Positions 4,539 to 63,998 of a stretch of 64,000 bases of DNA are shown in pieces (the first letter of the stretch is position 1; every line of letters begins with the position of its first letter). The stretch is taken from positions 314,849-378,848 of the IMG/VR virus record IMGVR_UViG_3300032116_000001; one strand, written 5' to 3'. The notes under the pieces are model-generated. The model had not been told where the DNA came from, searched no databases, and saw nothing but the letters and a program-made list of their open reading frames with translations. The translations under genes and the position numbers were made by a program.

Positions 4539-4543
4539 ATTTT

Positions 4544-5310: not shown

Positions 5311-5368
5311 ATATATACGCAATCATTTAGAGGGCGTGGTGCTATCGTAATTGAATTCAAAAGGTGTC

Positions 5369-7564: not shown

Positions 7565-7570
7565 AATATT

Positions 7571-8437: not shown

Positions 8438-8451
8438 TTACAAGGAAAACT

Positions 8452-9881: not shown

Positions 9882-9956
9882 GGCGTCCGTAGCTCAATGG
9901 CAGAGCACCTGACTGTGGCTCAGGAAGCGCGGGTTCGATCCCCGTCGGACGCCCCA
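9882..9956 (+). tRNA. tRNA-His(GTG)
   Basis: G-1 plus GCGTCCG/CGGACGC-C-CCA, CCTGA-CTGTGGC-TCAGG. Confidence 0.96.
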
Positions 9957-19803: not shown

Positions 19804-19874
19804 GCAAACATAGCTGAATGGTACAGCACTGTTATCTGAACAGTAGATTATTGGTTCAAGTCCAATTGTTTATT
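19804..19874 (+). pseudogene. degenerate tRNA (TCT, Arg-like)
   Basis: TAGCTGAATGGTACAGC D arm, ACTGT-TATCTGA-ACAGT, GGTTCAAGTCC; A at position 33, acceptor mismatch, no CCA. Confidence 0.6.
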
Positions 19875-35209: not shown

Positions 35210-36675
35210 TTATTCGATGATGTTAGCTGCTTTCTGGCGTCATATAATTCTCTAAATTTTCTAATTTTTTCTCTGACTTGTTGATTATTTATTTTTAATC
35301 CGTTAATCAAAATTGTCAGGAATCTTGCGCGTAAATCGTCACGTTCCCATGATGACATTTTGCGGTCGAGAAGTGAGTCAAACTGGCTTTGCCATTTTTC
35401 CATTTCCTCTTCATACTCATCTTCGTCTTCAAAATTATTCTCTGGCTCCTCTGGCATTAAATAATATATTTCGTCTTTCAATTCTTTTTCTGCCTTGTTT
35501 TTATAATCTTCAAAAAAACTGTCAACCTCATCGTATGAAGTTGTGTAATTCCAATAATATTTATCGAACTTACGCTTTTCGGCTAACTGTTCATCTCTTT
35601 TTGCTAAAATCTTTAGTAAACTATAAGCAGCATCATCAGCATAACGATCTTCTAACTGTCCCCACGTATTTTCAAATTTGTCCAGAGTGTTTTCCACTGC
35701 ATATAATACATCTAATTTAGTGAAATCAGTGTCTTGAGCCAGTCCATATTGATCTATTTCTGCCCCGTATTGATCGATATGATCGGCAACAGATTTCATG
35801 TCAACTCCGTCTAAATTAAATTCTTTTGTAATCAGCGATTCTTCCCATTTTTGCACTGGCAGATTTTCAACCCACTCTTTAATATATGATTGGTAATCTT
35901 CGCTTAGCACACGATTGGAGTGCCCCTTAATTTCAGAAATCTCCCCATATTCGTTCATCCTTATGGTCGCTACTGGATGATTTGTTTCGTCTCTTAGGGA
36001 AAATATTTGGTATTTCCCTTCTTTTACATCATCGCAGTATGTTCCAACGCAGTGATTCATTTTATTTCCCTCCGCTCTAAGATCATTCTCAGATGTGACT
36101 AACTGCATCGTGTACCCATCATCGTAATCGTAAACTACATTTGCGGGACTAATTGGCTCATACATTAATCCAGAACCCTTGCCAGCCATCATTGTGTGCC
36201 ATTCTTCGGACATTTTGACAGCCGAGGCCCAATCATAAGAAGAGAGCTGGAATCTCGATTGTCCTTGGTCATCGAGGGGGTGACGTGCGATTTCGTAATT
36301 ATACCAATCTTTAATCGCATCTGCCTGATTAATAATTTCCAGATTGTCAATGGCATATTTTCTACCATTGGGGTCCAACCTCATTTTCTTTACTTGAATC
36401 AAAAGCCATTTTGCAAATTGTGGAATATTTTGATAGCGCATGTAAAGATTAGATTCAAAATTGCTTTGCTGATTTTGTTCAGTTTTGATATTAGCAAGAT
36501 TTTGAATTTCTTCTATCGTGGCGTTTGGTTTGTTTCTGACAATATTCACATAAATTTTTTGGTGATCGGGGTTCTGATCACCAATCCACGCAATAACATG
36601 ATCGGGAACACCAAGTGACTTTAAATATTCCTCTTGGGTCCCCGATATGCAAACTTTTGCGTATTTATACCACAC
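35206..36675 (-). CDS. MWY-tagged PcfJ-like protein
   Basis: GTG start MWYKYAK; DLRAEGNKMNHCVGTYC...IFSLR...PVATI; paralogous to 14342-16909. Confidence 0.75.
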   Translation of the reverse strand: MWYKYAKVCISGTQEEYLKSLGVPDHVIAWIGDQNPDHQKIYVNIVRNKPNATIEEIQNLANIKTEQNQQSNFESNLYMRYQNIPQFAKWLLIQVKKMRLDPNGRKYAIDNLEIINQADAIKDWYNYEIARHPLDDQGQSRFQLSSYDWASAVKMSEEWHTMMAGKGSGLMYEPISPANVVYDYDDGYTMQLVTSENDLRAEGNKMNHCVGTYCDDVKEGKYQIFSLRDETNHPVATIRMNEYGEISEIKGHSNRVLSEDYQSYIKEWVENLPVQKWEESLITKEFNLDGVDMKSVADHIDQYGAEIDQYGLAQDTDFTKLDVLYAVENTLDKFENTWGQLEDRYADDAAYSLLKILAKRDEQLAEKRKFDKYYWNYTTSYDEVDSFFEDYKNKAEKELKDEIYYLMPEEPENNFEDEDEYEEEMEKWQSQFDSLLDRKMSSWERDDLRARFLTILINGLKINNQQVREKIRKFRELYDARKQLTSSNN

Positions 36676-39520: not shown

Positions 39521-40306
39521 CTATCGAAGCGGATTGTGTTTATTTTCTTTGTTATGCCTCATTAAAATGCTTGGCCAAAACGTTTCAGGCGGATATGATA
39601 GAATTTTTTTCTCAATTTTCTTTTTTAGAAAAATCTTGTGAAAATATGCAGTTAAAAACCTCCAGCCATCGGCTCTTATCACCACCAAGCATCTTCGCAT
39701 AGGATCAAAATCCACAATCATAAAACGCTTTTTGTTTGACATTTTGGTTCCAGCCATGACGAAATTATACTTTTCGGGGCTCCATGTGTGAGACAGACAA
39801 GTATAATTAATTGGCAAAAGGTAAAAACCAGTTTTTGACTTAGGAATGCTAATTTTGTAAGGTGGGTTCATTTTCATTTCAGTCTTAAAATATAAATATT
39901 TTGATTCCATTATGATCTTATCATACGTGTTTGCAAAGGTTTGAATGCCTCTGTGAAAAAGCCAACTGAGGCAGAATATACCGTCTGTTCGGGCTGTTAA
40001 GTATTGGAGTTTCTTGGGATCATTTCGGACAATTCTTATTTTCATATCAGTCCCGACTACCTTTGAGCCTTCTATTTTAAGAAACGCAGACGACATGTCC
40101 TGATATTTGAGTTCTGCCATTGCCCAAGGTTTTGTGGGCCAAAATAAATCATATGTCACTTTAACATGCGCTGGTTTAATAGCTAAATTGGGATCGAGTC
40201 CGATCACTTCAGGAGATACTTGATATTTTTTGGGGTCTATCAAAACATTTTCATGTTTAGTGGGCACGAGAGTTATTGTTTTCATTTCCATATTATTAAA
40301 TTCCAA
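39521..40306 (-). CDS. hypothetical protein
   Basis: 261 aa ORF coupled to the upstream GTPase. Confidence 0.65.
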
Positions 40307-41384
40307 GCATTTGTTTGAAGGGATCGTTTTCTTCGGAATAATTATTTTCTTCCCATTTTAACAACTCGCTATCTGTCAAAATACAATTATTCCAGAGTGA
40401 CTCTATTTGTTTTTTGTCTATTCCTATGCCAATGAAAACGATTTGTGACATAGGAGTTTCATTTCCCCATGGCATGCAATACTCGACAACACGCTGGTTA
40501 CCAGCTTGAGCAATGATATATTTGTAATTGGGATTTGAGCTTGTATAAAACCATCCCTTAACGCGCAATGCGCCTTTCCATTCTTTTTTCATGGCTTCTG
40601 CCACTCTTTCAGATTTTAGGGGCATGTTCGTAGAAAAGACAAAACTACTAAAGCCGTATTCATCAATCTCAGATTCATGACCGTTATGAAGTTCTTCCCA
40701 CCAGCCTGGATGTTGTGTTGCTTGATGCATGTTAAACAATTCAGTGTCCAGAATTTCATCAATATTAACTTCTCCATTGGTGGCAGTAATTATCTTTGAT
40801 TTCGGATTCATCTTTTTCACAAAAGACAAAACTTCTTGTTTCTTGTCTTCGCTTACAAGATCGCATTTATTCACAACAATGATGTCTGCAAATTCAATTT
40901 GATCGACAAGCAATTGGCTTAGGGGCTTTTCGGCTCCATCCGCTGCATGATTTTGTTTAAGATTTTCCACGATTGATGAAGCATCAACAACTGTCACCAT
41001 AGCGTCTAGCCGCGCAATATCTCCAAGCACTCTATTGTCGTCAATTGGCATTGCAAATGTATTCGCCACGGGCATAGGTTCGGATATACCCGTGGATTCT
41101 ACGATCAAATAATCATACTTTTCCTCAAGTGCCAATCGGGAAATTTCTTTTAGCAAATCTTGCCTTAAAGTACAACAAATACAACCATTTGTCAACTCAA
41201 CAACATCTTCATCGGCTCTGACAATCTTGCCTTTAATAGACTCAGCATCGATGTTAATTTCAGACATGTCATTAATAATCAAGGCAACTTTATATTTATT
41301 TTGATTACTAAGAATATGATTCAATAAAGTAGTTTTGCCCGCGCCTAAAAAGCCCGACAAAACTGAAACTGGCAATTTATTCAT
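40296..41384 (-). CDS. COG0523 (CobW/YeiR/ZigA-type) metallochaperone GTPase
   Basis: [32 protein letters not shown]. Confidence 0.93.
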
Positions 41385-43579: not shown

Positions 43580-44377
43580 TTACTTATCGTGGTTGCCAAT
43601 CCAGTCAGGACATCCTTTCCATCCCTTGTTTTTGTATGTAAGGTGTGGACATGACGGAATGTTATATGGTCTTTCTTCAGATGCAGAAAACTTATTCCAA
43701 TCCTGCGAACTTTGGAGTCCCAGTGATCGAACATAATCCCGAGCAGATTCAAAATCAAGAAACTTTCCTCCTCTTCGCCTAGTTTTTGTACCAAGCCAAT
43801 CACCATAGCCTTCCCATCCTTGGTTCTCATATTTTTTACAAGGCAACCACGGTATGTTATTGGGCTTTTGACCTGATTTGCAATAGGAAAACCATTCTTT
43901 CGCGTTTTTCAATCCCAGTGATCGAGCATAATCGCGAGCAGACTCAAAATCAAGATATTGGCGGTATCGATATGATACTGATTTAGTACCAAGCCAATCA
44001 CCAAGAGAAACCCATCCTTTATCTTTGTAGATAGACCTTGGTGCTGAAGGTATATTACTGGGCCTTTGACCAGATTTAATATAAGCTTCCCATTCTTTTG
44101 CATTTTTCAAATTCAATGACCGAACATAATCGCGAGCAGACTCAAAATCAAGGTATTGACGATTTCTTGGTGATAATCTATTATTTCCTAACCAATCCCC
44201 CCATCCTTTCCATCCTTGATCTTTGTAAACTGTGGTCGGTGAGCTAGGAATATTACAGGGCTTCAGGCCCGATCTGCAATAAGATAGCCAATCTGTGAAA
44301 CTTTTTAAATTCAATGACTGAACATAATCGCGAGCAGACTCAAAATCAAGATACTTGCTTGTTTTAGTAATTGACAT
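43580..44377 (-). CDS. stand-alone protein of four ~66 aa phage-integrase-repeat-like units
   Basis: 4 x (Y/F)LDFESARDY..SL.LK...W...KP.NIP..P...YK..GW....DW.G. Confidence 0.85.
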   Translation of the reverse strand: MSITKTSKYLDFESARDYVQSLNLKSFTDWLSYCRSGLKPCNIPSSPTTVYKDQGWKGWGDWLGNNRLSPRNRQYLDFESARDYVRSLNLKNAKEWEAYIKSGQRPSNIPSAPRSIYKDKGWVSLGDWLGTKSVSYRYRQYLDFESARDYARSLGLKNAKEWFSYCKSGQKPNNIPWLPCKKYENQGWEGYGDWLGTKTRRRGGKFLDFESARDYVRSLGLQSSQDWNKFSASEERPYNIPSCPHLTYKNKGWKGCPDWIGNHDK

Positions 44378-44531
44378 AATTATTATATGATTGTGAAATA
44401 AATAAAAAGGGGATTTTTAAACTACAATCATATCCAAGAAAGCACTTTGTGACAATAATCAATGCGCGAAAAAATTCCCCATTGTTTTAACATACGGAAC
44501 ATGGTACTAGAACAATGGGGAATTTTGAAGA

Positions 44532-45299
44532 TCAATCATCAATCGTTTCATAAGATGATCGAGCGCGAGGTTGATCTTGTGCTTGGGCCTTTTTTACCTC
44601 TTGCCCTCTTTTTGAATCATGCTCTAAGTTACGACGCTTCATGTTAAATTTAAACTTAATTACTTGCAGTCGCGCCCATTCAGTAAGACTTCCAAGAACT
44701 TTAACATCTTGATCAATCATGATATCAATTTTCTTCACCATGAGTGTTTTTGGCATCGCGCCATCAAGGGCTATGAAAACATTTTCGCTGAATTTTTTCA
44801 TATTGGCAAGGCCAACGACGGGATGGTTAAATTTAAGATACGGATCACATTTTACAGTGTAAATTGCTTTAATCCTGCGGTAGCGGGTGCTGCCGAAAAG
44901 CCTTGCGTACCAGGGAACAATCATTTTGTCATAATCAAGGCGAGTGCTGAAATGTATGTTTATAAGTTGATTTTCCCATGCCCCTCTCTTCATGGCGTCC
45001 ATACTCTTGAACGTCACGGCCACTGACTGAATATGTCTATGACTTCGGGGAACTGGTTCAGACGCTGCTGCACCCCACATACCTTGTGTCGCCGTTCTGA
45101 TGGCAACTTCCATGTCTTTAAACGGCTGGTCTTCACTAAGCTCAACTCCAATTTCTGCCCAGTTTTTGCGAATTTCTTTCCAGTGGTCCTCATTGATTGA
45201 CGCAGCGGTCGCATCATGTTGTGAGTTGTTTTGAACGGGAGAAAATTTTATATCTTTCTCCACAGTCTTTTTTGTCCTTTTGTTTTTATTTTTTGACAT
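44532..45299 (-). CDS. hypothetical protein, tandem paralog A
   Basis: MSKNKN...NEDHW..IHF.T.L.YDK...RSSYETIDD. Confidence 0.75.
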   Translation of the reverse strand: MSKNKNKRTKKTVEKDIKFSPVQNNSQHDATAASINEDHWKEIRKNWAEIGVELSEDQPFKDMEVAIRTATQGMWGAAASEPVPRSHRHIQSVAVTFKSMDAMKRGAWENQLINIHFSTRLDYDKMIVPWYARLFGSTRYRRIKAIYTVKCDPYLKFNHPVVGLANMKKFSENVFIALDGAMPKTLMVKKIDIMIDQDVKVLGSLTEWARLQVIKFKFNMKRRNLEHDSKRGQEVKKAQAQDQPRARSSYETIDD

Positions 45300-45376
45300 G
45301 TTTTTACATACCTTTGTTTTTTATGGGCTCGTCAATGCCATTGTTCCACAATAAAATCCATAAGCAATTGTAATTC

Positions 45377-45402
45377 GAAAGCCCCGTATTACAGGGGCTT
45401 TC
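45377..45402. terminator. hairpin GAAAGCCCC/GGGGCTTTC (second copy at 46262-46287)
   Basis: 9 bp perfect stem, duplicated along with the paralog unit. Confidence 0.6.
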
Positions 45403-45417
45403 AGGGATTTCTGAAGA

Positions 45418-46185
45418 TCAATCATCAATCGTTTCATAAGATGATCGAGCATGGAGCTGGTCTGGCGCTCGACCTCTTTTCACATCATGCTCTGCTTTGC
45501 GACGCTTATTGTTAAATTTAAACTTAATTACTTGCATTTTCATCCATTTGGTAAGATTGCCCAAGCCTGTAACATCTTGATCAATTTTGACATTAATCTT
45601 CTTTATAATGAATGTTTTAGGAATCGTGGCACTGATGGCTTTATAAGCATTTTCGTGAATAGTTTTTGCATCAGAATTAATAGTTATAGGATGAAGCAAA
45701 TCAAGATATGGTTCAAATCCCACAGTGTAGACTGCCTTAACACTGCGAAAACGCTTAAAGTTGAAAATCCTTACATGCCACGGCATAATCATTTTATCAT
45801 ATTTAAGCCCAGTGTTAAAGTGTATGTTCATGATTTGTGTCTCCCATTCACCTTTTTTTAAGCCCTTTGGGCTTGTGATTTTGACGTTCACCAATTTTCT
45901 ACCCTGATGGGCTGTTGAGTTGTTTATCATCTGAGTTTGTCTTGTCACGTCCCACAATGGTTCCGCCGCACCGCTAATGGCATTTTTCATGTCTTCAATA
46001 GGCTTGTCCTCGCTAAGTTCAACTCCGTGTTCTGACCAAGACTTACGAAGTGATGACCAGTGTTCCTCATTATGACTTAGCAACATGGGAGTCGCACCGT
46101 GGCGCGAATAGGCTTTAGAAACAGGAATTGTTACCTTATTTTCGACAGATTTTTTTGTCGCTTCGTTATTTTTATTTTTTGACAT
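45418..46185 (-). CDS. hypothetical protein, tandem paralog B
   Basis: MSKNKN (ATG 46185)...RSSYETIDD; flanks near-identical to paralog A. Confidence 0.75.
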   Translation of the reverse strand: MSKNKNNEATKKSVENKVTIPVSKAYSRHGATPMLLSHNEEHWSSLRKSWSEHGVELSEDKPIEDMKNAISGAAEPLWDVTRQTQMINNSTAHQGRKLVNVKITSPKGLKKGEWETQIMNIHFNTGLKYDKMIMPWHVRIFNFKRFRSVKAVYTVGFEPYLDLLHPITINSDAKTIHENAYKAISATIPKTFIIKKINVKIDQDVTGLGNLTKWMKMQVIKFKFNNKRRKAEHDVKRGRAPDQLHARSSYETIDD

Positions 46186-46273
46186 GTTTTTACATCCCTT
46201 TGTTTTTATAGGCTTGCCAATACCATTATTCCACAATAAAATATATAAACGATTGTGATTCGAAAGCCCCGCA

Positions 46274-49200
46274 TTACAGGGGCTTTCTTGCTGTTACATA
46301 AAGGAATTGGTATCTAATTTCCTGTTCTTCGATCACAAATCCAGCTGATTCAATTTCCTGAATCAATTCTGACACACAATCGGACCAGCGATCCTTTGGC
46401 TCTGCGATCATAAGTGTCCCGCCGTTCGCAAGGCAACGATGAGCTTCTGTTAGATACTCTCCAAGATTGCATCCCATGAGCGAAAGCGAGAATACAGCAA
46501 CGTCAATATCGCCGTTCATCAAAGGAATTTTAGATATATCACAAGATACAACGTCTTCATTGATCGCGATATGATCGAAGCTGTGAACTCGATGATTTGG
46601 CAATGCCTTGGCAAGCAAGGCCTCTCCACACCCGAGATCAGCCACTACTAATCGCTGTGACATTTGATTGATTTTCTCAGCAATCTTTTCGTAAGGAATC
46701 TCTTCCCAGTTCTTTCGTTTGTCCCCATAGAGCGTGTGATACAGATACCATTCCGATGGGTCATCTTGAAGCCGCTTGTGTGTTTTTTGTGAATTCGTGA
46801 TGTTCCATCGACGATTCATTTCACTAAAATCACCATGGCGACGTTTTGCTTCTATTTCTACTTCGGGCGGAAGCGGAATGATCAGCATGGAGCGATCAAT
46901 TAGCATAATCTCGTCGTTTTCCAGTCGCTCAACCCACTTATCAAGAGCTTCTTGCGACTTCTTAAGCATCTTAGAAGGATCAGCAAGCTCACCCTTCGCA
47001 ACAGTGCCATCTACGGCACAATCCGCAAGTGTTCGTTTATAGTGGATACGACCAAGGCGAGACTCGTCATAGGACCAGCGCAAAGGCTTAATGCCTCCTT
47101 CCACGAAGCCTTCCACGTAAACCACGGGGATCACAATGTCTACACCTTCATCAGTAAACTTACTGCCCTGGCGATGGATGCGACCAATTAGCTGATGGTA
47201 TTCTGCCGCAGTCCAGGGCAACGATGAAATCACCATTCGGTTGGAGACATGTTGCAATCCATCCACACCCGTAGACACAGGCTTGCTACCAACGAGAACA
47301 TCTACCTTGCCATCGCGGAACAAGTCCACGCCCGTATTGTCTTCACCCGTGAAAATACCAACCTTTAACTTAAGTTTAGCGCGAATCTCGTCAGCAATCA
47401 TTTGTGTGAGTTCTCCCCCACCGACGTAATGCGAATAAACAATCGTACCTTTTTTAATATTGGCCAATAGTGTAGGCATTTTGATTTTGAGCAATGCTCG
47501 TTCCATCGCCACAACATCGCCCTTGGGTACTTTAAGCAAATTATCGATATGATCGGAAGCATCAATTTCAGGATGATGTTCGCGAGGCTGATCCATATAC
47601 GAAGGGCGGTAACGAATGCCATTAATCACCAAGTGGTAATGCAGCCTTAAGGCGTTGTTCACGTTCGACTTGTGCATCAAATCTTTGTATTCATGGCCAG
47701 TTACAAATTCTAGAAGCTTTTTGCCCTCCATCAAATTATTGATCACAGGCGTCGCACTCATGCCTAATACCTTGAGTTCTGGATTATTTTCCTGGGCTTG
47801 AACCCGAAGGGCGCGAAGAATCTGCAATCGCTTCGATTCGTCTTCTGATCGTTGCTTAATGTTATGAATTTCATCGATCACAAGGAAGTCAATACTCGCG
47901 CTTTCCAATAGTTTTCGCACATAATTACTTGAATTTGGCTGTTGGAAAGATTCAAAGTTCAGAATAACATAGTTGTGCTTGTCTCTATCAAAATCTACTG
48001 TATCAAGGTCTTTCGTAAACACAACGCTATCGGGGAATGTGTTCTTGATAACAGATTCCCAGCCGCTTAAAGTAGCGTTCATGGCTACGATCACCGTGAC
48101 ACGAGCATCGATCACGCGACTAGTGAAAACCGCGCTGAGAGTTTTGCCAGCCCCTGTGCCGCTCATATTCAAAACGTAGCTTTGATTTTGCACCAAAACC
48201 GTCGTCAGGCGTTGCATCATATTAGGAAGTGTGATTTCCGTTTGCCCCTTGAGTCTGAATTTATATCCGTCAGGAATGGGAATGTTTTTCGCCTGTTCTA
48301 GCTGTGTCAAAAACTTGTTAACGATGACTTGATAATATTCACCCTTATCGGAATAACTCAGCACTTCCTGAATATCAGGAGCGTTGATGTCTTCCCCGTT
48401 ATTCAGAAAAGCGTTCCACAATCGCTGAGTGCGATTGGCAATCATGAAGCCAATCGCTTCACCGTCGGCCATCGCAGGAATATTTCCCACAAGGTTATCG
48501 GGCGTGGAAAAGTCGCGGCTCTTAAGCGGCTTGATAGGATGATTCGCTGTCAGAGCAGCAATGCCCGTGGCACGAGGGCCATTTGCTTCATCATCGGCTA
48601 CTGTATCAACCACTTGATAATCATCAAAGTCATCAAAATCATCTAATTCTTCATCCGTGATTTCGCCGTTCTCGATGGCATCTTCAGTATCCTTAATAAT
48701 TTCATCTAATATAGCTTGCTTCTCTTCATCTGACTTATTGGAGTCGATGATTTCCTCTAGTCTTTTAATAAGTTTAGAGGCTTTAGATGTGCCTAAAGAT
48801 GCCGCCTTGGCGAGCCCGCTTTGCATTTGTATCAAGTAAAGCTCGCTGGCGTCCAAATACGGAGCAAGAGACTGAATGGATTTCAAGAATCCCAAATATG
48901 ATCGGGAGTTCCAATGGCCCTGATAGCCAAGGAAATCTGACCAAGAAGTCCATCCCCGATCTTTATAGGACTTAGAGGGATCACCAGGAATATCATCGGG
49001 CTTTTGTCCTGATTTACAATAGGGTGACCATTCACCTTGTGACTTCAATCGCAATGATCTAGCATAATCACGAGCATCTTCAAATGGCCTAAAAACACGA
49101 TCTTGAGGGGCGACAGTTCCAGTTCCCAACCAATCACCCATCCCAATCCATCCCTGATCTTTATATGACTGATGAGGAGCGACAGGAATATCATCAGGTT

Positions 49201-50503
49201 TTTGCCCTGATTTACAATAGGATTTCCATTCCTCAAGATTCTTTAATCCCAGTGATCTAGCATAATCACGAGCATCTTCAAACGGCTTGTAAACACGATC
49301 TTGAGAGGCGATAGTTCCCGTTCCTAACCAATCACCATATCCATTCCATCCCTGATCTTTATATGATCTATCGGGATTAGCAGGAATATCATCAGGTTTT
49401 TGTCCCGATTTGTAATAGGATTTCCATTCCTCACGATTCTTCAGCCCCAATGATCTGGCATGATCGCGAGCATCTTCGAATGGCCTAAAAACACGATCTT
49501 GAGGGGCGACAGTTCCAGTTCCTAACCAATCGCCATATCCATTCCATCCCTGATCTTTATAAACGTGATCGGGAGCGGCAGGAATATCATCAGGTTTTTG
49601 CCCTGATTTACAATAGGATTTCCATTCCTCAAGATTCTTTAATCCCAATGATCTGGCATGATCGCGAGCATCTTCAAACGGCCTAAAAACACGATCTTGA
49701 AGGGCGATAGTTCCAGTTCCTAACCAATCGCCATATCCATTCCATCCCTGATCTTTATAAACGTGATCGGGATGGGCAGGAATATCATCAGGTTTTTGTC
49801 CCGATTTACAATAAGAATACCATTCATCACGATTCTTCAATCCCAATGATCTAGTATAATCGCGAGCATTTTCAAACGGCTTGTAAACACGATTAAAACT
49901 GGCGATAGTTCCAGTTCCCAACCAATCACCCATCCCAATCCATCCCTGATCTTTATATGACTGATAGGGAGCGGCAGGAATATCATCAGGTTTTTGTCCC
50001 GATTTACAGTAGGATTCCCATTCACGTAGTGATTTTAATCCCAATGATCTAACCTGATCGCGAGCATTTTCAAACGGCTTGTAAACACGATTAAAACTGG
50101 CGATAGTTCCAGTTCCCAACCAATCACCCCATCCTTTCCATTCCTGATCCTTGTAGGACCTATCGGGATTATAAGGAATATCATCAGGTTTTTGTCCCGA
50201 TTTGCAATATGATTTCCATTCACGTAGTGATTTTAATCCCAATGACCTAGCATGATCGCGAGCATCTTCAAACGGCTTGTAAACACGATCTTTAGGAGCG
50301 ATAGTTCCAGTTCCTAACCAATCACCCCATCCTTTCCATCCCTTATCCTTGTAAGACCTATCGGGAGTAGTAGGAATATCATCAGGTCTTTGTCCCGATT
50401 TGCAATAAGATGACCATTCCTCACGATTCTTCAATCCCAATGATCTAGCGTAATCCCGAGCAGATTTGAAGTCTAAAAATTTTCTTGTTTTAGTAATTGA
50501 CAT
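46274..50503 (-). CDS. 8 x 66 aa repeat + SF2 helicase + RRP8-like SAM methyltransferase
   Basis: GTGAGKT, DEIH, SAT, TGVDGLQ, QLIGRIHR; YHTLY...W..P, DLGCGE, FSLSLMG. Confidence 0.88.
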   Translation of the reverse strand: MSITKTRKFLDFKSARDYARSLGLKNREEWSSYCKSGQRPDDIPTTPDRSYKDKGWKGWGDWLGTGTIAPKDRVYKPFEDARDHARSLGLKSLREWKSYCKSGQKPDDIPYNPDRSYKDQEWKGWGDWLGTGTIASFNRVYKPFENARDQVRSLGLKSLREWESYCKSGQKPDDIPAAPYQSYKDQGWIGMGDWLGTGTIASFNRVYKPFENARDYTRSLGLKNRDEWYSYCKSGQKPDDIPAHPDHVYKDQGWNGYGDWLGTGTIALQDRVFRPFEDARDHARSLGLKNLEEWKSYCKSGQKPDDIPAAPDHVYKDQGWNGYGDWLGTGTVAPQDRVFRPFEDARDHARSLGLKNREEWKSYYKSGQKPDDIPANPDRSYKDQGWNGYGDWLGTGTIASQDRVYKPFEDARDYARSLGLKNLEEWKSYCKSGQKPDDIPVAPHQSYKDQGWIGMGDWLGTGTVAPQDRVFRPFEDARDYARSLRLKSQGEWSPYCKSGQKPDDIPGDPSKSYKDRGWTSWSDFLGYQGHWNSRSYLGFLKSIQSLAPYLDASELYLIQMQSGLAKAASLGTSKASKLIKRLEEIIDSNKSDEEKQAILDEIIKDTEDAIENGEITDEELDDFDDFDDYQVVDTVADDEANGPRATGIAALTANHPIKPLKSRDFSTPDNLVGNIPAMADGEAIGFMIANRTQRLWNAFLNNGEDINAPDIQEVLSYSDKGEYYQVIVNKFLTQLEQAKNIPIPDGYKFRLKGQTEITLPNMMQRLTTVLVQNQSYVLNMSGTGAGKTLSAVFTSRVIDARVTVIVAMNATLSGWESVIKNTFPDSVVFTKDLDTVDFDRDKHNYVILNFESFQQPNSSNYVRKLLESASIDFLVIDEIHNIKQRSEDESKRLQILRALRVQAQENNPELKVLGMSATPVINNLMEGKKLLEFVTGHEYKDLMHKSNVNNALRLHYHLVINGIRYRPSYMDQPREHHPEIDASDHIDNLLKVPKGDVVAMERALLKIKMPTLLANIKKGTIVYSHYVGGGELTQMIADEIRAKLKLKVGIFTGEDNTGVDLFRDGKVDVLVGSKPVSTGVDGLQHVSNRMVISSLPWTAAEYHQLIGRIHRQGSKFTDEGVDIVIPVVYVEGFVEGGIKPLRWSYDESRLGRIHYKRTLADCAVDGTVAKGELADPSKMLKKSQEALDKWVERLENDEIMLIDRSMLIIPLPPEVEIEAKRRHGDFSEMNRRWNITNSQKTHKRLQDDPSEWYLYHTLYGDKRKNWEEIPYEKIAEKINQMSQRLVVADLGCGEALLAKALPNHRVHSFDHIAINEDVVSCDISKIPLMNGDIDVAVFSLSLMGCNLGEYLTEAHRCLANGGTLMIAEPKDRWSDCVSELIQEIESAGFVIEEQEIRYQFLYVTARKPL
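48915..50490 (-). repeat. coding tandem array of 8 x 198 bp units
   Basis: Periodicity 198 (tgtcccga at 50193 and 50391); near-identical blocks between units. Confidence 0.95.
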
Positions 50504-51021
50504 AATTATTATATGATTTTGAAATAAATAAAAAGGGTATTTTTTAATTTTCTAGCAACAGGGCCTCGCCAACGATCCCCGAACAGAATATGAAATTGTT
50601 CAGCGATTATATGGCCTTTCGTTTATATAATGTACATCGTGTTAATATAGATCATTCCCATCAAGGCGGATGATCGCGAGCAAATTATTAATGTGATGTT
50701 TTAAGCCGCGGTAAGATTTTTCATTCTTAATGACTTTATAAAACTGTTTTACTAAGGCCTTCCGCAATCTTCATATCCCGCCGCAATAAACGATATAAAA
50801 TCGGCATTAAACATTACAATTGGTGATCGCCCAAACTCATTAATCCCAAAATGCGTATCAATGTAATGGCCATAAACGCCAGTGAAGAACACGTCTCCGT
50901 GTTCGTTCCAAATTCTGTTGACCAACACGGGAATATCCGACATATACATTGCCTTCTGTCTAATATCTCGATAACTACTGAATTCATAAACACCATAGTG
51001 ATTAAAGACTTCTGTGTAAAT

Positions 51022-51851: not shown

Positions 51852-52742
51852 CTAATCGGGAAAGTATTCTTCACCGTTTAGATAATAGCGTTTGGTGCCA
51901 TCAGAGTAAAGCACCGCGGGAAGATTATTATCTCGATGTATTCTTCCTTTACGCATCCAAAATCTGGTGCCGCTGCCCATAATAATAGCAGGCTTATCTT
52001 CATCGCGATGGATTTGTCCATTCTGATACCACTTTTGATTTCCGTTGGAATCTATGATCGCGGGCAAATCATTGTCTCGATGAATAACGCCGCTTCTGTA
52101 CCACACTTGTCTTCCGTCCGCGTACAATTCAGCGGGCAAGCTTTCGTCAACTCGGCCTGTTTTTCCATGTTGACACCACTTTTGATAACCATCTAAACAT
52201 ACAATGGCGGGCAAATCATTACCTCGATGAAACTTTCCATGTATGAGCCAAAATTGACTAAAATCTGCCGAAATTACTGCGGGCAAATCATTACCTCGAT
52301 GCCTCACGCCGTCTTTATACCACGCTTGATACCCACTAGCCATTGTTATAGCTGGTTTATCTCCGTCGCGATGAAGCTTTCCGTTTTGAAGCCACTTTTG
52401 GCATCCATTACTGTAAATTATTGCTGGGAGGTCATTGTCTCTGTGTATAAATCCATCTTTAAAATAAATTTGATTCCCGTCGTATTCAATTTTATCCACG
52501 GGAGGCATCAATCTCATTTTTTTCACGCAAATAAAATGCTCATCATCCTCAAGTTGAGAATATCCGTTGTCCCAGTCAATTTCCACAGGAAAAATCCTAT
52601 CCACATCTAAAATCCATGGAGTGGGATGATCCGTAACATAAAACCCTTCTTCCCCCCCAATCTTCATCCCCTGCAACATACTCGCTCCATTTTGCGGGCT
52701 TATTATTTTCGGGTATATAAAGTTTTTTTCCTTCTTCCTCAC
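51852..52742 (-). CDS. protein with 8 x 24 aa MORN-like HRDNDLPA repeats
   Basis: HR(D/G)NDLPA(I/V)...G.Q.WY..G repeated 8 times. Confidence 0.85.
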   Translation of the reverse strand: MRKKEKNFIYPKIISPQNGASMLQGMKIGGEEGFYVTDHPTPWILDVDRIFPVEIDWDNGYSQLEDDEHFICVKKMRLMPPVDKIEYDGNQIYFKDGFIHRDNDLPAIIYSNGCQKWLQNGKLHRDGDKPAITMASGYQAWYKDGVRHRGNDLPAVISADFSQFWLIHGKFHRGNDLPAIVCLDGYQKWCQHGKTGRVDESLPAELYADGRQVWYRSGVIHRDNDLPAIIDSNGNQKWYQNGQIHRDEDKPAIIMGSGTRFWMRKGRIHRDNNLPAVLYSDGTKRYYLNGEEYFPD

Positions 52743-53516: not shown

Positions 53517-53882
53517 TTATGATTTTCTCCGCAATAGATTTTTAGCCGTGCCGCTATTTTCTTTTCCTGGTCTTACCCAGGCAATATCTTCGTCAGAGGC
53601 CAATGTCATAGCTTCGTCCCGATCAGTATCCGATTCATATCCCCCTTTGGTTGGAAAACCAGGGTTGTATCTCGGGGAATCAAACATATGAAATATGGTG
53701 ACTTTTAATCCTGATGCTGATCGAAGAGACCAAAGATAATCAATCGCCATGCGATCAGTTCCTGGGGCATCGCCGATCACAAAATGATCGCCATTTACCA
53801 CAGAACTAAAAATTTTCCCAACATAATGTTTTTCAAATTCTTTCGGAGTAATATCCAAATGACCGCTAATGAATTTGATCAT
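53517..53882 (-). CDS. SLOG-like (YspA/DprA-type) small protein
   Basis: ISGH...FVIGDAPGTD.MA..YL...RDEAM. Confidence 0.6.
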   Translation of the reverse strand: MIKFISGHLDITPKEFEKHYVGKIFSSVVNGDHFVIGDAPGTDRMAIDYLWSLRSASGLKVTIFHMFDSPRYNPGFPTKGGYESDTDRDEAMTLASDEDIAWVRPGKENSGTAKNLLRRKS

Positions 53883-54835
53883 AAAAACACCCCCTTTTCC
53901 AGCGCGGAAAGTTCCCATTCCACATTTGCCCTGGCCGTGCTTTCCATCGTAGGAGTTGCAGCACGACTAGTATAAATCTTTGGACGATCAAGCATGCCCT
54001 CAAGGAAGTTTATTCGTCCCTTTCTATAATCGGGGTCTGATATGTGGCCGTACTCTTTTCTTATAGCGCGAGCATATCTCATATACTTATTTGTTGATGT
54101 TGAAAATACTTCCATATCCGCATCTAAAAGCATGGCAACAACTGGGCTTTCCGTTTTATGATGCTTTGTTGCCATGATGCCACGTTCATGATTTCTTCCA
54201 GGCCAGAGATCAAGAATACTTGGTAATTCGTTTTTATTTAACCCCGCGCCCATTGAATTCACTTGGCGAAAATAATTAATATCATTCATATTTGATAACA
54301 TGAATTCAGCTGAATTTTGCTCATTATTCATATCTCCGATTTGATAACAAATATCGTGATACAAGGCGTCAATCAAAAGCCAAGGATAGTTTATCCCCGA
54401 GTGCTTAAGTAAAAACAAAACAACTTCTCGCATGTGCTTTTCATTGTGCCAAAACCTATGAGGTTCTGAATAACAAGCGCTGATGTTTCTGGCAATTGCT
54501 TCAATGTTTTCTTTGCATACGTATCTATCAAAAACCATATTAAAAACATCGGACGCATTTGGTAAAAGCCAATCAACTTTAGGGTCATTGACGCAAAATG
54601 CTTCAACCTGGCGATATATAGTGTGTCTGAGGCTGAAATTTGCGGGGGATACTTCAGAATAATTCAACCATCTGGATTTAGAAGCTCCAAAACAACTGCA
54701 CCGAACCTTGACCTTTTCTCTCGATTTTCGATTATCGACAATTTCTCCGATATTTAGCGCATATCTATGCCTACTATCGGGATCAGTAAACACGAACGGG
54801 GTGTTTACCGATACTATTTTCTTTACATCCAGCAT
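53879..54835 (-). CDS. HD-superfamily phosphohydrolase
   Basis: YSEPHRFWH..H, LYHD, NEQNSA, LLDAD, EYGH...Y..GR. Confidence 0.8.
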   Translation of the reverse strand: MLDVKKIVSVNTPFVFTDPDSRHRYALNIGEIVDNRKSREKVKVRCSCFGASKSRWLNYSEVSPANFSLRHTIYRQVEAFCVNDPKVDWLLPNASDVFNMVFDRYVCKENIEAIARNISACYSEPHRFWHNEKHMREVVLFLLKHSGINYPWLLIDALYHDICYQIGDMNNEQNSAEFMLSNMNDINYFRQVNSMGAGLNKNELPSILDLWPGRNHERGIMATKHHKTESPVVAMLLDADMEVFSTSTNKYMRYARAIRKEYGHISDPDYRKGRINFLEGMLDRPKIYTSRAATPTMESTARANVEWELSALEKGVFL

Positions 54836-54843: not shown

Positions 54844-55704
54844 TTAATTGTTATTTTTAAAATCATCAGGCAAAGATTCCATAAGCGGATACGGAAGATT
54901 TTCTACATCCACCCATTCCCATCGATCACACTTGTCTGGCTCTTTGTTTTCCAGAACTCCTCCCGCTAACTTACAAGCAACGTAAAGGGTGATATAATGC
55001 TTTTTAAGATCATGGTATATTGTTTTTGTGTATCCATATCTTCGAGAATTATTATCGGGAATTACTACAAGCCCAGTTTCTTCTAATGTTTCTCTTATAG
55101 CCGTTTCTTCTGGTGTTTCTCCCCACTCCATATGTCCTCCAGGGAACGCCCAGCACCCATCGCCAAGCTTGGATTTTCTCAATCCCATAAGGACTTGTTT
55201 GCGACTATCGTCTTTGAAAATAATTGCACCTACTCCTACAAGCGGGCCTTCGGGGACAATAGTTTTTCCTCCGAAGGCCTCGGAGTCCATAAAGGCATTT
55301 AACAACAAGGAATACACTCGCGAATTGGGTCTTCGCCGCTCGTAAAATTCACGATCATTGCCATTATAGAACTTGGAAATTGCGGCCCCGATCCCAGCCG
55401 ACCTTGAAATGCCAGCCTCACAATGAACTACGATGGTTGTCAATTCAGGCCATAACTTCACGAAATTTACAATTTGACTTGCGTCACTTTCCGTAAACAA
55501 AACCCCGCCCCTATCTGAAGAATAATCCAAGTCATGGAATTGAAGGCTCAAAACATCAAGTCTATTTGGGCATGATCTCAAAGAAACACGCTTGCTACCA
55601 GGATCGGAAACTGAAATAACAATATAGGGATCATTCAACTGAAAATGACTCATGTCATGTCTTGATAAGACGTGAATGTGACGGATGCTTCCGCGAAACA
55701 ACAT
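54844..55704 (-). CDS. CX5R phosphatase-Nudix hydrolase fusion
   Basis: VHCEAGISRS; PGGHMEWGETPEETAIRETLEETGL Nudix box, EPDKC..WEW (NUDT15-like). Confidence 0.88.
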   Translation of the reverse strand: MLFRGSIRHIHVLSRHDMSHFQLNDPYIVISVSDPGSKRVSLRSCPNRLDVLSLQFHDLDYSSDRGGVLFTESDASQIVNFVKLWPELTTIVVHCEAGISRSAGIGAAISKFYNGNDREFYERRRPNSRVYSLLLNAFMDSEAFGGKTIVPEGPLVGVGAIIFKDDSRKQVLMGLRKSKLGDGCWAFPGGHMEWGETPEETAIRETLEETGLVVIPDNNSRRYGYTKTIYHDLKKHYITLYVACKLAGGVLENKEPDKCDRWEWVDVENLPYPLMESLPDDFKNNN

Positions 55705-57621: not shown

Positions 57622-57696
57622 TGGTGCGGGGGAGGGATTCGAACCCATCGAGACTCCAGGGTATGAACCTGGCATGATACCTCTTCACCACCCCGC
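57622..57696 (-). tRNA. tRNA with CAT anticodon (Met or Ile2 undetermined)
   Basis: GCGGGG...CCCCGCACCA, CCAGG-TTCATAC-CCTGG, GGTTCGAATCC. Confidence 0.88.
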
Positions 57697-57738
57697 ATTT
57701 GTTATACGCTTTGTGTTACACAAAAATTAGCATATGAT

Positions 57739-62731: not shown

Positions 62732-62770
62732 AATTCAAATGGCCGAGATTAATTCTCGGCCATTTGAATT
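62732..62770. terminator. 17 bp perfect hairpin after the RNA ligase gene
   Basis: AATTCAAATGGCCGAGA-TTAAT-TCTCGGCCATTTGAATT. Confidence 0.7.
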
Positions 62771-63998
62771 AAGCAATCTCTTCAGCGTCTACGTAGCTAT
62801 CAGAATCCTTTAGATAGCCTTCTAGCAAACCAAAAGTGATTGACTTGGACTTTAACCAATCAGTGCCATGCTCGCTTTCGTAACGAATCACTACACCTTC
62901 CTGGATGTGCGAAGTATCCAATCGAGAAGGCAACGCATCCATGCCGCTTTCTCCGTCTGTAAGGACAGAAACGCGCTCAGCCAGCTTTTCATAATCGCCA
63001 TCGAAGATAAACGACTCAATCAAAGGCACAGGAGTAAGTCCAAGCTCGCGGCAACGATTCACCATCTGCGGCCACGAAAGGTCCACTGCGTGACCATCTT
63101 CGTTCACCCGAGTGATACGGTAAATGTAAGTCTTGCACTGTCCATCTTCCGCACCATAGCGATACGTAATCGTGTCTCCAAAGCGACTCTTCACAGCCTT
63201 GTCGTTCAATCCAGAAGTGGACTGAGGAGACATGATCGGAGCCCCAGTTTCCGTATAGCCAACAAGCTCACCGTAAATTACCTCACCCTTGTGAAGAGCA
63301 ATTCCACTAGTGGCATGACGACGGAAATCTTCCTTGCCGTAATAACCCTCTGCTCCAGGAGCCCGCTTCTCAAGAACAACGTTTCGGCTTCCATTGAGAT
63401 ACACCCATTCTCGTCGAGTCGTAGGAAGATTGAGCCACTTGGCAACAAACTTCATCAATCCTCGATATTCGATTTCACTTTCTTCGAGAACATGAGAATA
63501 TCTAAAAGAAGTCCCATGAAGCTTTTCAGAAATGTAAATCACCGCGCCCTCAGGAATCATATTCATGCCTCTCTTAAACGGAGTGGTATCAATATGCTTA
63601 GCAAACATAATGTTTTCCTTCTGGCTCTTCTTGCTGTTCGCGGCCTGGGCACGAAGCGTTTCAGGCGTGAAATACTTGTTGCAGATAGGATGTCCATTAA
63701 GATCGCTAAATTCAAACCCTTCGGTGAGGTTTTCCAAATTAGCACCCGTGTAAGCAAGGCTGTCTAGCGGGCACCAATAGCCCTCAGACTTCGCTCCACG
63801 CATCTTCACGGCCTTCACACGACGATGCGGCTCGAAATAACCGCCCGCGGGCTTACCATCAGCGTCCTTTCGGCGAACCAAGTCGTTCGCCGAAGCGAAA
63901 CCTTCAGAAAGCTGTCCCCCAGCCTCAAAAAACACGCCAAGCTGACCGTCTTCAATGTTCTTTCCAACAATCACCTGATAACCCTGGCAAGTCCCCAA
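62769..63998 (-). CDS. ATP-dependent RNA ligase (Rnl2/DRB0094-like), 5' end truncated by the window
   Basis: EKLHGTS (motif I), YGELVG, EGVVIR, LKSKS. Confidence 0.88.
   Translation of the reverse strand: MGTCQGYQVIVGKNIEDGQLGVFFEAGGQLSEGFASANDLVRRKDADGKPAGGYFEPHRRVKAVKMRGAKSEGYWCPLDSLAYTGANLENLTEGFEFSDLNGHPICNKYFTPETLRAQAANSKKSQKENIMFAKHIDTTPFKRGMNMIPEGAVIYISEKLHGTSFRYSHVLEESEIEYRGLMKFVAKWLNLPTTRREWVYLNGSRNVVLEKRAPGAEGYYGKEDFRRHATSGIALHKGEVIYGELVGYTETGAPIMSPQSTSGLNDKAVKSRFGDTITYRYGAEDGQCKTYIYRITRVNEDGHAVDLSWPQMVNRCRELGLTPVPLIESFIFDGDYEKLAERVSVLTDGESGMDALPSRLDTSHIQEGVVIRYESEHGTDWLKSKSITFGLLEGYLKDSDSYVDAEEIA

What the first reader, a model, noticed from the sequence alone, without database searches (positions are those of the whole stretch)
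46274..50503. Mosaic 8-repeat array fused to an SF2 helicase and an RRP8-like methyltransferase: possible programmable nucleic-acid modifier
Seen: eight 66 aa units with a fixed scaffold and clustered variable sites (after IP: TT, YN, AA, AH, AA, AN, VA, GD; next triplet DRS, DRS, YQS, DHV, DHV, DRS, HQS, SKS; GW[K/I/N]G[W/M/Y]). Blocks are shared between adjacent and non-adjacent units (3 and 7 share QSYKDQGWIGMG, 4 and 5 share PDHVYKDQGWNGY, 2 and 3 share IASFNRVY), which points to repeat shuffling. All helicase motifs are present, and no nuclease motif was recognised. Established: RRP8/NML are m1A rRNA methyltransferases, and the repeat resembles the phage-integrase repeat unit. Inference: the repeats form a TALE/PPR-like reader that directs a translocase-coupled methylase.
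Basis: partly seen in the sequence, partly recalled or inferred. Interest (0 to 1): 0.8.

Follow-up and report, generated by a model that had tools for sequence, protein, structure and literature searches.

The report
Repeat-array, Snf2-like motor, RRP8-type methylase fusion
A huge freshwater phage encodes a 1409-residue protein made of eight swappable 66-residue repeats (probably a DNA-targeting module), an ATP-driven Snf2-like motor and a methyltransferase of the RRP8 rRNA-methylase family; it belongs to a large family that nobody has studied experimentally.

Summary
ORF 46274..50503 (-) encodes eight exact 66-aa units matching Pfam INT_rpt, an acidic helical linker, an SF2 ATPase and an RRP8/Methyltransf_8 domain. 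No nuclease domain was found.

It is not unique. More than 1,100 proteins in at least 219 bacterial species, plus phage contigs, share the ~835-aa core. No paper or curated model describes the family.

The motor is most similar to Snf2-type dsDNA translocases. The methylase superposes on human NML/RRP8 (Z 26.4).

The N-terminal array is an interchangeable cassette:
- Relatives carry 0-12 INT_rpt units, or 4-9 DUF4379 zinc fingers with or without an HTH.
- Cores 98% identical carry arrays only 45-60% identical, and the identity jump falls exactly at the array end.
- INT_rpt arrays also stand where the methylase-TRD part stands in Type ISP-like Mrr-helicase enzymes.
- The arrays are basic (median pI 9.6).

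This supports "a targeting array directs a translocase-coupled methylase". It does not support a TALE/PPR-like solenoid with a two-residue code. The units are separate four-helix mini-domains with no solved structural relative, and variation is spread over at least 13 positions.

Nucleic-acid binding, the methylation substrate and the biological role are untested. The count of eight units rests on one assembly.

The parts
46274..50503 (-). Whole ORF, 1409 aa: INT_rpt array, linker, Snf2-like SF2 ATPase, RRP8-type methyltransferase
48902..50485 (-). Array of eight 66-aa INT_rpt units (aa 7-534). Unit boundaries fall every 198 nt: 50288-50485, 50090-50287, 49892-50089, 49694-49891, 49496-49693, 49298-49495, 49100-49297, 48902-49099
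   Evidence: Exact 66-aa spacing. TRF period 198. Unit HMM scores 81-96 bits each. AF2 shows four helices per unit, pLDDT 93. pI 8.7
48224..48901 (-). Family-conserved helical region with an acidic low-complexity stretch (aa 535-760; DEELDDFDDFDDY at 617-629)
   Evidence: Conserved columns in alignment A3. pI 4.3. The acidic part is disordered in AF2, pLDDT below 50
47009..48223 (-). SF2 ATPase core (aa 761-1165): motif I SGTGAGKT 781-788, motif II VIDEIHN 875-881, motif III plus a Snf2-like block 914-934, motif V 1070-1082, motif VI 1104-1113
   Evidence: Pfam ResIII/DEAD/Helicase_C. Motif positions. Best structural matches are Snf2 remodelers, Z 15.8-19.5
46859..47008 (-). Helical bridge between motor and methylase (aa 1166-1215)
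   Evidence: AF2 secondary structure
46277..46858 (-). RRP8/Methyltransf_8 class I SAM methyltransferase (aa 1216-1409) with intact SAM motifs: VVADLGCGEA 1286-1295, FD 1309-1310, CD 1321-1322, LSLMGCN 1340-1346
   Evidence: Pfam E 7e-44. phmmer to PDB 2zfu E 2e-29. Z 26.4, rmsd 1.9 A. Invariant family columns
50504..50547 (-). Upstream block, near-identical to the block upstream of the stand-alone array gene; it continues into the first 7 codons. Only these two copies occur in the window
   Evidence: family D7
43580..44377 (-). Paralogous stand-alone protein of four INT_rpt units (265 aa, pI 9.5) with the same MSITKT start

Best explanation
The gene encodes a single-polypeptide 'array-motor-methylase' of a widespread, uncharacterised family found in bacteria, their mobile elements and phages.

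Shown:
- The domain composition.
- Intact ATPase and SAM-binding motifs.
- Snf2-like and RRP8-like folds.
- The array is a fast-evolving, recombining, exchangeable cassette on a conserved core.

Inferred:
1. The eight basic INT_rpt mini-domains dock the enzyme on particular DNA sequences. Each unit would contribute a few contacts through exposed residues of helix 2 and the IPxxPxxxY/GWxG loops. This resembles a polydactyl zinc-finger array or the DNA-binding modules of homing endonucleases more than a TALE.
2. The Snf2-like ATPase translocates on or distorts duplex DNA.
3. The RRP8-type domain then methylates a base ring nitrogen that is normally hidden in the duplex (m1A-type chemistry) in DNA, or possibly in nascent RNA.
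4. In the phage this serves a genetic-conflict role, either self-marking/anti-restriction or host takeover.
For: Architecture and motifs.

Family size and spread:
- 1149 hits at 40-51% identity over the core.
- 219 species genomes across cyanobacteria, Chloroflexota, Planctomycetota, Chlamydiota and other phyla.
- Phage contigs.

Methylase: 2zfu E 2e-29 with conserved SAM motifs; Z 26.4 and rmsd 1.9 A.

Motor: the top ~30 non-methylase matches are all Snf2 remodelers in DNA-bound states, Z up to 19.5, against about 15 for XPB, RecQ and UvsW.

Array as a targeting module:
(a) Relatives have DUF4379/DUF723/CapR zinc-finger arrays or an HTH in its place. These are described as DNA-binding modules of phage homing endonucleases (bioRxiv 10.1101/2023.03.23.533998; 10.1101/2020.11.28.402263).
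(b) The N-terminal type changes at least 5 times on the core tree.
(c) Cores 98% identical carry arrays 45-60% identical and of different length, with the identity step exactly at the array end.
(d) 20 of 45 multidomain INT_rpt proteins are Mrr_cat_2 plus helicase. Their first ~625 aa match the nuclease-helicase part of Type ISP/IIG enzymes at E 1e-83 to 1e-90, so the array stands where the methylase-TRD would be.
(e) INT_rpt also occurs with integrases, DUF559/Vsr, GIY-YIG, AP2 and GATA domains.
(f) Arrays are basic: median pI 9.6, and 98% are above 8.

Selection: the scaffold is under strong purifying selection (dN/dS 0.03), while 13 sites run at about 1.

Context: solitary genes in variable, mobile or defence-type regions. 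A methylase-Snf2 dyad is an established theme of phage and plasmid conflict proteins (PMC5512222).
Against: - No binding or methylation was measured here.
- Every characterised PF05148 member methylates rRNA, not DNA (bioRxiv 10.1101/313874).
- The domain lacks the (D/N)PP(Y/F) motif of DNA amino-methylases, and no TRD or base-flipping element was identified.
- The unit fold has no solved relative (Foldseek E above 2; best Z 3.1; no PDB sequence hit), so DNA binding rests only on association.
- INT_rpt also occurs with FGE-sulfatase and other non-DNA domains.
- The window array is only mildly basic (+7).
- The margin between Snf2 and other SF2 families is modest, and Pfam SNF2-rel_dom is below its cut-off (18.4 against 24.9 bits).
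- The 90% clustering of the protein database hides pairs with similar arrays, which exaggerates how often cassettes differ.
- No candidate DNA target repeat was seen in the window.
Confidence: 0.5

Rival explanations
1. RNA-directed enzyme. The RRP8-type domain makes m1A (or a similar mark) in host or phage rRNA or tRNA. The SF2 module acts as an RNA/RNP remodeler and the array binds structured RNA or ribosomal particles. The phage would use it to reprogramme or protect translation.
For: - The only experimentally known activity of the family is rRNA m1A (bioRxiv 10.1101/313874).
- The domain is 33-45% identical to human NML/RRP8 with all SAM motifs.
- The phage carries 10 tRNA genes and an RNA ligase.
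- The closest relative, P0002, lies beside T4-type RNA ligase, PNKP and IF3 genes.
Against: - The motor's best structural matches are dsDNA translocases, not DEAD-box or DEAH RNA helicases.
- In relatives the array position is occupied by modules described as DNA-binding.
- INT_rpt arrays replace the DNA-recognition part of Type ISP-like nuclease-helicases.
- A housekeeping rRNA enzyme would not be expected to carry hypervariable, swappable arrays.
Confidence: 0.2
2. The array is a TALE/PPR-like solenoid in which each repeat reads one nucleotide through a few code residues, so the target could be predicted from the repeat order.
For: - Tandem repeats have a fixed scaffold and clustered variable sites.
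- The window's variable sites coincide with the highest-entropy family positions 21, 22, 25, 40, 42, 43 and 51.
- Repeat number and content change rapidly between relatives.
Against: - Units are 66 aa with four helices and flexible junctions: pLDDT dips at the linkers and pTM is 0.52.
- At least 13 of 66 positions vary here and about 25 vary family-wide.
- Within most arrays the units are only ~53% identical, barely above the between-protein level of 48%. This is unlike the near-identical repeats of TALEs.
- dN/dS of about 1 does not show positive selection.
Confidence: 0.07
3. The array is not a nucleic-acid reader. It would bind a protein or another ligand, for example recruiting the motor-methylase to a host complex such as RNA polymerase, or to a cell structure. 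Its variability would then reflect an arms race with that partner. The methylase might act on a DNA-bound protein.
For: - INT_rpt occurs with FGE-sulfatase and other non-DNA domains, and 86 of the 150 best arrays are array-only proteins.
- No solved DNA-binding fold matches the unit.
- Snf2 relatives such as Mot1 and RapA act on protein-DNA complexes.
Against: - Arrays are consistently basic.
- They are interchangeable with zinc-finger or HTH arrays.
- They are attached to integrases, homing-type nucleases and Type ISP-like nuclease-helicases.
Confidence: 0.13

Closest known systems
DNA methylase - SWI2/SNF2 helicase dyad of phage and plasmid polyvalent proteins (archetype: phage P1 DarB; PMC5512222)
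   Same: [quoted passage not shown]
   Different: DarB-type proteins use an EcoKI/TaqI-like N6-adenine methylase placed N-terminal to the helicase, together with LPD36. Here the methylase is RRP8-type and C-terminal, and there is an N-terminal array of DNA-binding-type modules. Virion packaging is unknown.
Type ISP restriction-modification enzymes (Mrr nuclease - SF2 helicase - methylase - TRD)
   Same: Single-polypeptide logic of recognition module plus motor plus effector. In Mrr-helicase proteins whose first ~625 aa match the nuclease-helicase part of such enzymes, INT_rpt arrays stand where the methylase-TRD part would be.
   Different: The window protein has no nuclease. Its motor shows no BLAST similarity to that helicase. 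Its methylase is not an amino-methylase, and recognition would be by tandem mini-domains rather than a TRD.
Eukaryotic RRP8 / nucleomethylin (PDB 2zfu), the 25S/28S rRNA m1A methyltransferase
   Same: The catalytic domain: Pfam 150.7 bits, 33-45% identity, Z 26.4, rmsd 1.9 A, with the same SAM-binding motifs and conserved MGxN, EAxR and AE residues.
   Different: The eukaryotic proteins have no ATPase and no repeat array. They are nucleolar and their substrate is rRNA.
CapR / DUF723 / DUF4379 zinc-finger arrays of phage homing endonucleases (bioRxiv 10.1101/2023.03.23.533998)
   Same: Tandem, number-variable small modules thought to set the DNA target. They occupy the same N-terminal position in most homologues of this protein.
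   Different: INT_rpt has no cysteine/histidine zinc ligands. It is helical and 66 aa long, and DNA binding has never been tested.
TALE and PPR repeat proteins
   Same: Tandem repeats with variable positions on a fixed scaffold, and evolution by repeat gain, loss and shuffling.
   Different: Those repeats are 34-35 aa two-helix units forming a continuous solenoid with one or two code residues. Here the units are 66-aa four-helix units with many variable positions and uncertain inter-unit packing.

Membership tests
Pfam INT_rpt (PF14882) | Whole-protein HMM score above the gathering cut-off | tested here: met
   34.0 bits against a cut-off of 26.5, E 3.5e-8. Many homologues carry PF14882 in the precomputed annotation. 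The neighbour ORF scores 34.3 bits.
RRP8 / Methyltransf_8 (PF05148) | HMM score above the cut-off, and the fold of the solved member | tested here: met
   150.7 bits against a cut-off of 27. phmmer to 2zfu E 1.9e-29. Foldseek TM 0.84. Z 26.4 and rmsd 1.9 A over 190 residues.
RRP8 / Methyltransf_8 (PF05148) | Intact SAM-binding motifs I-IV | tested here: met
   DLGCGE, FD, CD and LSLMGxN align with the human enzyme and are invariant or nearly so in 120 family members.
RRP8 / Methyltransf_8 (PF05148) | N1-adenine methylation of large-subunit rRNA | not testable with these tools
   This needs biochemistry. Known only for the yeast and human enzymes (bioRxiv 10.1101/313874).
Snf2 family of SF2 ATPases | Pfam SNF2-rel_dom above the cut-off | tested here: not met
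   18.4 bits against a cut-off of 24.9. Several homologues have weak SNF2-rel_dom hits.
Snf2 family of SF2 ATPases | Structural similarity to Snf2 ATPase cores exceeding that to other SF2 families, with helical insertions in the lobes | tested here: inconclusive
   INO80 Z 19.5, Snf2h 18.7 and Mot1 17.6 at rmsd about 3 A over 370-390 residues, against XPB 15.3, RecQ 15.1 and UvsW 15.1. The model has helices after motif III. The block SATPVINNL..E...LL after motif III resembles the Snf2 TGTPxQN..EL..LL block; that comparison is from memory, not from a tool.
TALE / PPR-type programmable repeat readers | Repeats of about 34-35 residues stacked into one continuous alpha-solenoid | tested here: not met
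   66-aa units with four helices each. pLDDT 93 but pTM 0.52, with dips at the junctions. No fold match.
TALE / PPR-type programmable repeat readers | Near-identical repeats that differ at one or two code positions | tested here: not met
   36 of 66 columns vary across the eight units. Among units 2-7 there are 13 scaffold positions plus the linker. About 25 positions exceed 2.5 bits family-wide, and the median within-array identity is 53%.
TALE / PPR-type programmable repeat readers | One repeat binds one nucleotide | not testable with these tools
   This needs binding data or a complex structure.
Type I / III / ISP restriction-modification enzymes | A nuclease domain and an N6A/N4C/C5 DNA methylase with a TRD | tested here: not met
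   There is no nuclease or DNA-methylase Pfam domain. PADLOC gives only weak helicase-region hits. NCBIfam gives none above its cut-off.
DarB-type methylase-helicase dyad (polyvalent proteins) | An EcoKI/TaqI-like adenine methylase N-terminal to a Snf2 ATPase, with LPD36 | tested here: not met
   The methylase is RRP8-type and C-terminal. LPD36 was not searched. The family definition is taken from PMC5512222.

The most novel reading that the evidence does not exclude
INT_rpt arrays would be a previously unrecognised modular DNA-recognition system. Each 66-aa unit would read a few base pairs through exposed residues of helix 2 and the proline-rich loop. Nature would retarget the arrays by unit gain, loss, shuffling and whole-cassette exchange.

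The arrays would guide at least two effector types:
- A Snf2-coupled RRP8-type methylase that writes a non-canonical DNA mark such as m1A.
- Type ISP-like nuclease-helicases.

Together these would form a repeat-programmed, restriction-modification-like layer of phage-host conflict. The prokaryotic/phage methylase family would also be the source of eukaryotic RRP8.
Probability: 0.15. Interest if true: 0.85.

Novelty: new variant of a known kind. Interest (0 to 1): 0.62.

Why it matters
If the array is a sequence reader, this family is a natural, modular way of aiming an ATP-driven motor and a methylase at chosen nucleic-acid sites. Its sister architecture would aim a nuclease in the same way.

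That would give a new scaffold for designed DNA binders. It could also reveal a new base modification in phage-host conflict. RRP8-type chemistry targets a Watson-Crick-face nitrogen, which would be unusual in DNA.

The family also places the closest prokaryotic relatives of the eukaryotic rRNA methylase RRP8 inside mobile conflict genes, which bears on that enzyme's origin.

The family is large (over 1,100 proteins; INT_rpt in about 9,000 sequence clusters), yet it has no experimental literature. Simple assays would therefore be informative.

Tried and rejected
- Nucleotide search of the gene and of 16 kb beside it against INPHARED phages found no match. tblastn found only repeat-level hits in jumbo Xanthomonas and Stenotrophomonas phages.
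- PADLOC and NCBIfam gave no named system or family, only weak helicase-region hits.
- Literature searches for PF14882/INT_rpt, PF05148/Methyltransf_8, and RRP8 with helicase and phage found nothing functional.
- The fold of the repeat unit has no match in the PDB by Foldseek, by VIA-align wide, or by profile-sequence search.
- Read and contig layout meant to compare repeat number across samples failed. Logan contigs of four runs all break in the array, and one 708-nt skip with a 27-nt side is not credible.
- tblastn of 12 window neighbours against the related loci held at that point (L001-L017) found no conserved neighbour. Only the repeat protein hit, and it hit the arrays themselves.
- No DNA repeat families other than the coding repeats were found in the window as candidate binding sites.
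- The shared upstream block is not a general phage promoter motif. It has only two copies.
With the 4-unit protein it returned only the self locus.
- I briefly thought the window wrapped around the IMG/VR contig. Recomputing showed it is simply the last 64,000 bases of the contig, 314849-378848.
- The Pfam TAL_effector hit in a Thermoplasmata homologue has no individual stretch and lies in a zinc-finger array. I treated it as spurious.

Full report
WHAT IS THERE

The minus-strand ORF 46274..50503 is open for 1409 codons. Residues 7-534 are eight units of exactly 66 residues. At the DNA level this is a 198-nt tandem repeat of 7.6 copies, 85% matches and score 1839. Units 2-7 are 77-90% identical in nucleotides. 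Unit 1 is 70-80% identical to them, and the terminal unit 8 is 60-68% identical to all the others.

Pfam finds INT_rpt (PF14882, 34.0 bits, cut-off 26.5), ResIII/DEAD/Helicase_C at aa 768-1113, and Methyltransf_8 (PF05148, 150.7 bits) at aa 1217-1398. It finds no nuclease. The SF2 motifs and the SAM motifs are intact.

WHERE IT COMES FROM

Window 38277-58485 is identical to the stretch of IMG/VR contig IMGVR_UViG_3300032116_000001 (378,848 bp) that was fetched, and by those coordinates the window is the contig's last 64 kb. The window has 10 tRNA genes, an RNA ligase, a NUDIX protein, a phosphohydrolase, CobW, a TnpB-like ORF, PcfJ-like proteins and many ORFs without any family. This is typical of a huge phage.

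The gene's unique part occurs at about 100% identity in freshwater metagenomes (and several labelled fungus metagenomes) of at least 12 studies dated 2017-2025.

THE FAMILY

The ~835-aa part after the array has 1149 database relatives at 40-51% identity. The N-terminal part varies from 0 to 12 INT_rpt units. At least 219 species-level genomes encode the core. They include many cyanobacteria (Pseudanabaena, Phormidium, Microcoleus, Microcystis), Chloroflexota, Planctomycetota, Chlamydiota, Verrucomicrobiota and others. Several viral contigs encode it too.

In bacterial genomes the gene stands alone among toxin-antitoxin genes, transposases and defence-type genes. No conserved partner was found. 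The closest relative (47% identity) lies in a phage contig next to RNA ligase, PNKP, rIIB and IF3 genes. No PADLOC system, NCBIfam model or paper describes the family.

THE METHYLASE

The C-terminal domain matches human nucleomethylin/RRP8 (PDB 2zfu) by sequence (E 1.9e-29) and by predicted structure (TM 0.84; Z 26.4 and rmsd 1.9 A over 190 residues). Motifs DLGCGE, FD, CD and LSLMGxN, and further residues shared with the human enzyme, are invariant in 120 family members.

Membership in the RRP8 family is therefore well founded. The only known activity of that family is m1A in large-subunit rRNA (bioRxiv 10.1101/313874). The substrate here is unknown.

THE MOTOR

The AlphaFold model of aa 469-1409 has pLDDT 80 and was built from a 120-sequence alignment. 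Its best structural matches are Snf2-type ATPases in their DNA-bound states: INO80 Z 19.5, SRCAP, Snf2h, ISW1, Mot1, ALC1, Chd1 and RapA, at rmsd about 3 A over 370-390 residues. XPB, RecQ, UvsW and a DEAD-box protein follow at Z about 15.

The Pfam SNF2 model stays below its cut-off. I therefore call the motor Snf2-like rather than a proven family member.

THE REPEAT UNIT

A four-unit model, built from an alignment of 113 four-unit windows, has pLDDT 93 but pTM 0.52. Each unit has two longer helices (residues 6-15 and 21-29) and two short ones (41-45 and 53-57). Confidence dips at the junctions. This suggests well-defined mini-domains with uncertain mutual arrangement.

No solved structure matches.

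Family-wide, about 20 positions are nearly invariant: F6, A9, R10, L16, L18, W24, W/Y27, P34, I37, P38, P41, Y45, G49, W50 and G54-G58. About 25 positions are highly variable. The most variable are 21, 22, 25 and 26 (one face of helix 2), then 40, 42 and 43 (the proline-rich loop and short helix), and 51. The window's variable sites are a subset of these.

Among units 2-7, dN/dS is 0.03 at 45 scaffold codons and 1.02 at the 13 variable codons. The variable codons were chosen after the fact. This shows a strongly constrained scaffold and unconstrained or diversifying sites, not proven positive selection.

The mosaic pattern is real. The nearest neighbour changes between thirds of the unit, and 218 of 406 site pairs are incompatible. 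The window's array is the most internally homogeneous of 86 arrays: 74% mean identity against a median of 53% and a between-protein level of 48%. It is therefore a recently expanded or homogenised array.

WHY THE ARRAY IS PROBABLY A TARGETING MODULE

1. Most family members that lack INT_rpt carry 4-9 DUF4379 treble-clef zinc fingers in the same place. Some also carry DUF723/CapR modules or a sigma-70-region-4/resolvase-type HTH. These zinc-finger modules are described as the repeated DNA-binding domains of phage homing endonucleases, and CapR is an experimentally shown DNA-binding repressor (bioRxiv 10.1101/2023.03.23.533998; 10.1101/2020.11.28.402263).

2. On a tree of the core, the N-terminal type changes at least five times. 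One INT_rpt form is sister to a zinc-finger form with 98% support.

3. Proteins whose 800-aa cores are 98% identical carry arrays whose best unit-to-unit identity is only 45-60%. The arrays often differ in length as well. Along the alignment, identity jumps from about 0.4 to about 0.95 exactly at the end of the array. This is the pattern of swapped specificity cassettes, as with the target-recognition domains of restriction enzymes.
   - Caveat: the database is clustered at 90% identity, so pairs with similar arrays are hidden.
   - One pair with 90% identical cores has colinear arrays at 75-97% identity, so ordinary co-divergence also occurs.

4. A profile of the unit finds 8,964 sequence clusters, with arrays of up to 17 units.
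   - Of the 150 best, 86 are array-only proteins.
   - Among 45 multidomain proteins, 37 have a helicase C-terminal domain and 20 have an Mrr-type nuclease.
   - The first ~625 residues of the two examined match the nuclease-helicase part of Type ISP/IIG restriction-modification enzymes at E 1e-83 to 1e-90, and in the first of them the array follows about 50 residues after the matched region. The INT_rpt array thus stands where the methylase and target-recognition domain would be.
   - These genes are also solitary and lie on mobile elements.

5. INT_rpt also accompanies tyrosine integrases, DUF559/Vsr, GIY-YIG, AP2 and GATA domains.

6. Arrays are basic, with median pI 9.6. The linker that follows them is strongly acidic.

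HOW IT MOST LIKELY WORKS

This paragraph is inference. The array docks on particular DNA. The Snf2-like ATPase translocates on or distorts the duplex. The RRP8-type domain methylates a base nitrogen that the motor makes accessible, in DNA or possibly in nascent RNA.

The closest system-level analogues are two:
- The methylase-Snf2 dyad of phage and plasmid polyvalent proteins such as P1 DarB, which protects incoming DNA from restriction (PMC5512222).
- Single-chain Type ISP enzymes.

The present family differs in methylase type, domain order and recognition module, and it has no nuclease. An RNA-directed role is the main rival, because every studied RRP8 enzyme acts on rRNA and the phage is rich in translation- and RNA-repair-related genes.

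The general idea that a variable repeat array directs a translocase-coupled methylase is supported by comparative evidence.

The TALE/PPR analogy in the strict sense is not supported. There is no evidence of a solenoid, of a one-repeat-one-base relation, or of a two-residue code.

LIMITS

- Nothing was measured biochemically.
- The count of eight units depends on one assembly.
- The Snf2 assignment and the DNA-binding role are inferences from structure prediction and domain association.

Noticed in passing
window 43580-44377 (-), with upstream 44378-44421: A stand-alone 265-aa protein made of four INT_rpt units (pI 9.5). It begins with the same seven codons (MSITKT.) as the large gene and shares its ~44-nt upstream block. 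This suggests a duplication of the 5' end together with its expression signals.
   Followed up: partly
window 44518-46287: A tandem duplication of an ~886-nt unit. It holds two paralogous genes of unknown function (255 aa at 44532-45299 and 272 aa at 45418-46236). Each is preceded by a conserved block, and a GC-rich hairpin (GAAAGCCCCG...CGGGGCTTTC) lies upstream of each gene's start on the coding strand. They have no Pfam, PHROG, PADLOC or NCBIfam match. They lie between the large gene and the stand-alone array gene.
   Followed up: partly
window 51852-52742 (-): A 296-aa ORF with about eight 24-aa repeats of the type G.Q.W..NG..HRD.DLPA (72-nt DNA period). No family match apart from a weak sub-threshold hit to Pfam DUF834 (E 3e-4, 20.9 bits against a cut-off of 23).
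   Followed up: no
window 1-2100, 9883-9956, 19804-19874, 57623-57697: Ten tRNA genes, seven of them within the first 2.1 kb. T-arm-like sequences at 1686-1719 and 1749-1783 were not called as tRNAs and may be degenerate copies. A TnpB/OrfB_IS605-like ORF (2370-3548) lies directly beside the cluster.
   Followed up: no
window 62769-63998 (-), 54844-55704 (-), 53879-54835 (-), 40296-41384 (-), 14342-16909 (-), 35206-36675 (-): Auxiliary genes typical of huge phages: an RNA ligase, a NUDIX protein with a weak dual-specificity-phosphatase motif, a phosphohydrolase, a CobW-type GTPase and two PcfJ-like proteins.
   Followed up: no
L001 (Pseudanabaena sp., CP101416.1) 6413-8650: INT_rpt units continue upstream of the annotated start of the homologue. 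A repeat fragment also lies on the far side of a DDE transposase gene (6603-7745). The array seems to have been interrupted by an insertion sequence.
   Followed up: no
L018 (Argonema galeatum) 1844-7723; L019 3433-7741: Stand-alone or split RRP8-family methylase genes exist. One lies beside a C5 DNA methylase, a Z1-domain protein and DUF4420, which together look like a defence island. Another overlaps the end of a 1202-aa helicase gene, so it is a split or frameshifted family member.
   Followed up: partly
L097 (Thermoplasmata MAG) 261-2159: The N-terminal DUF4379 zinc-finger array of this homologue gives a whole-protein Pfam TAL_effector hit (E 4e-12) without any individual matching stretch. 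This is probably a repeat-composition artefact.
   Followed up: no
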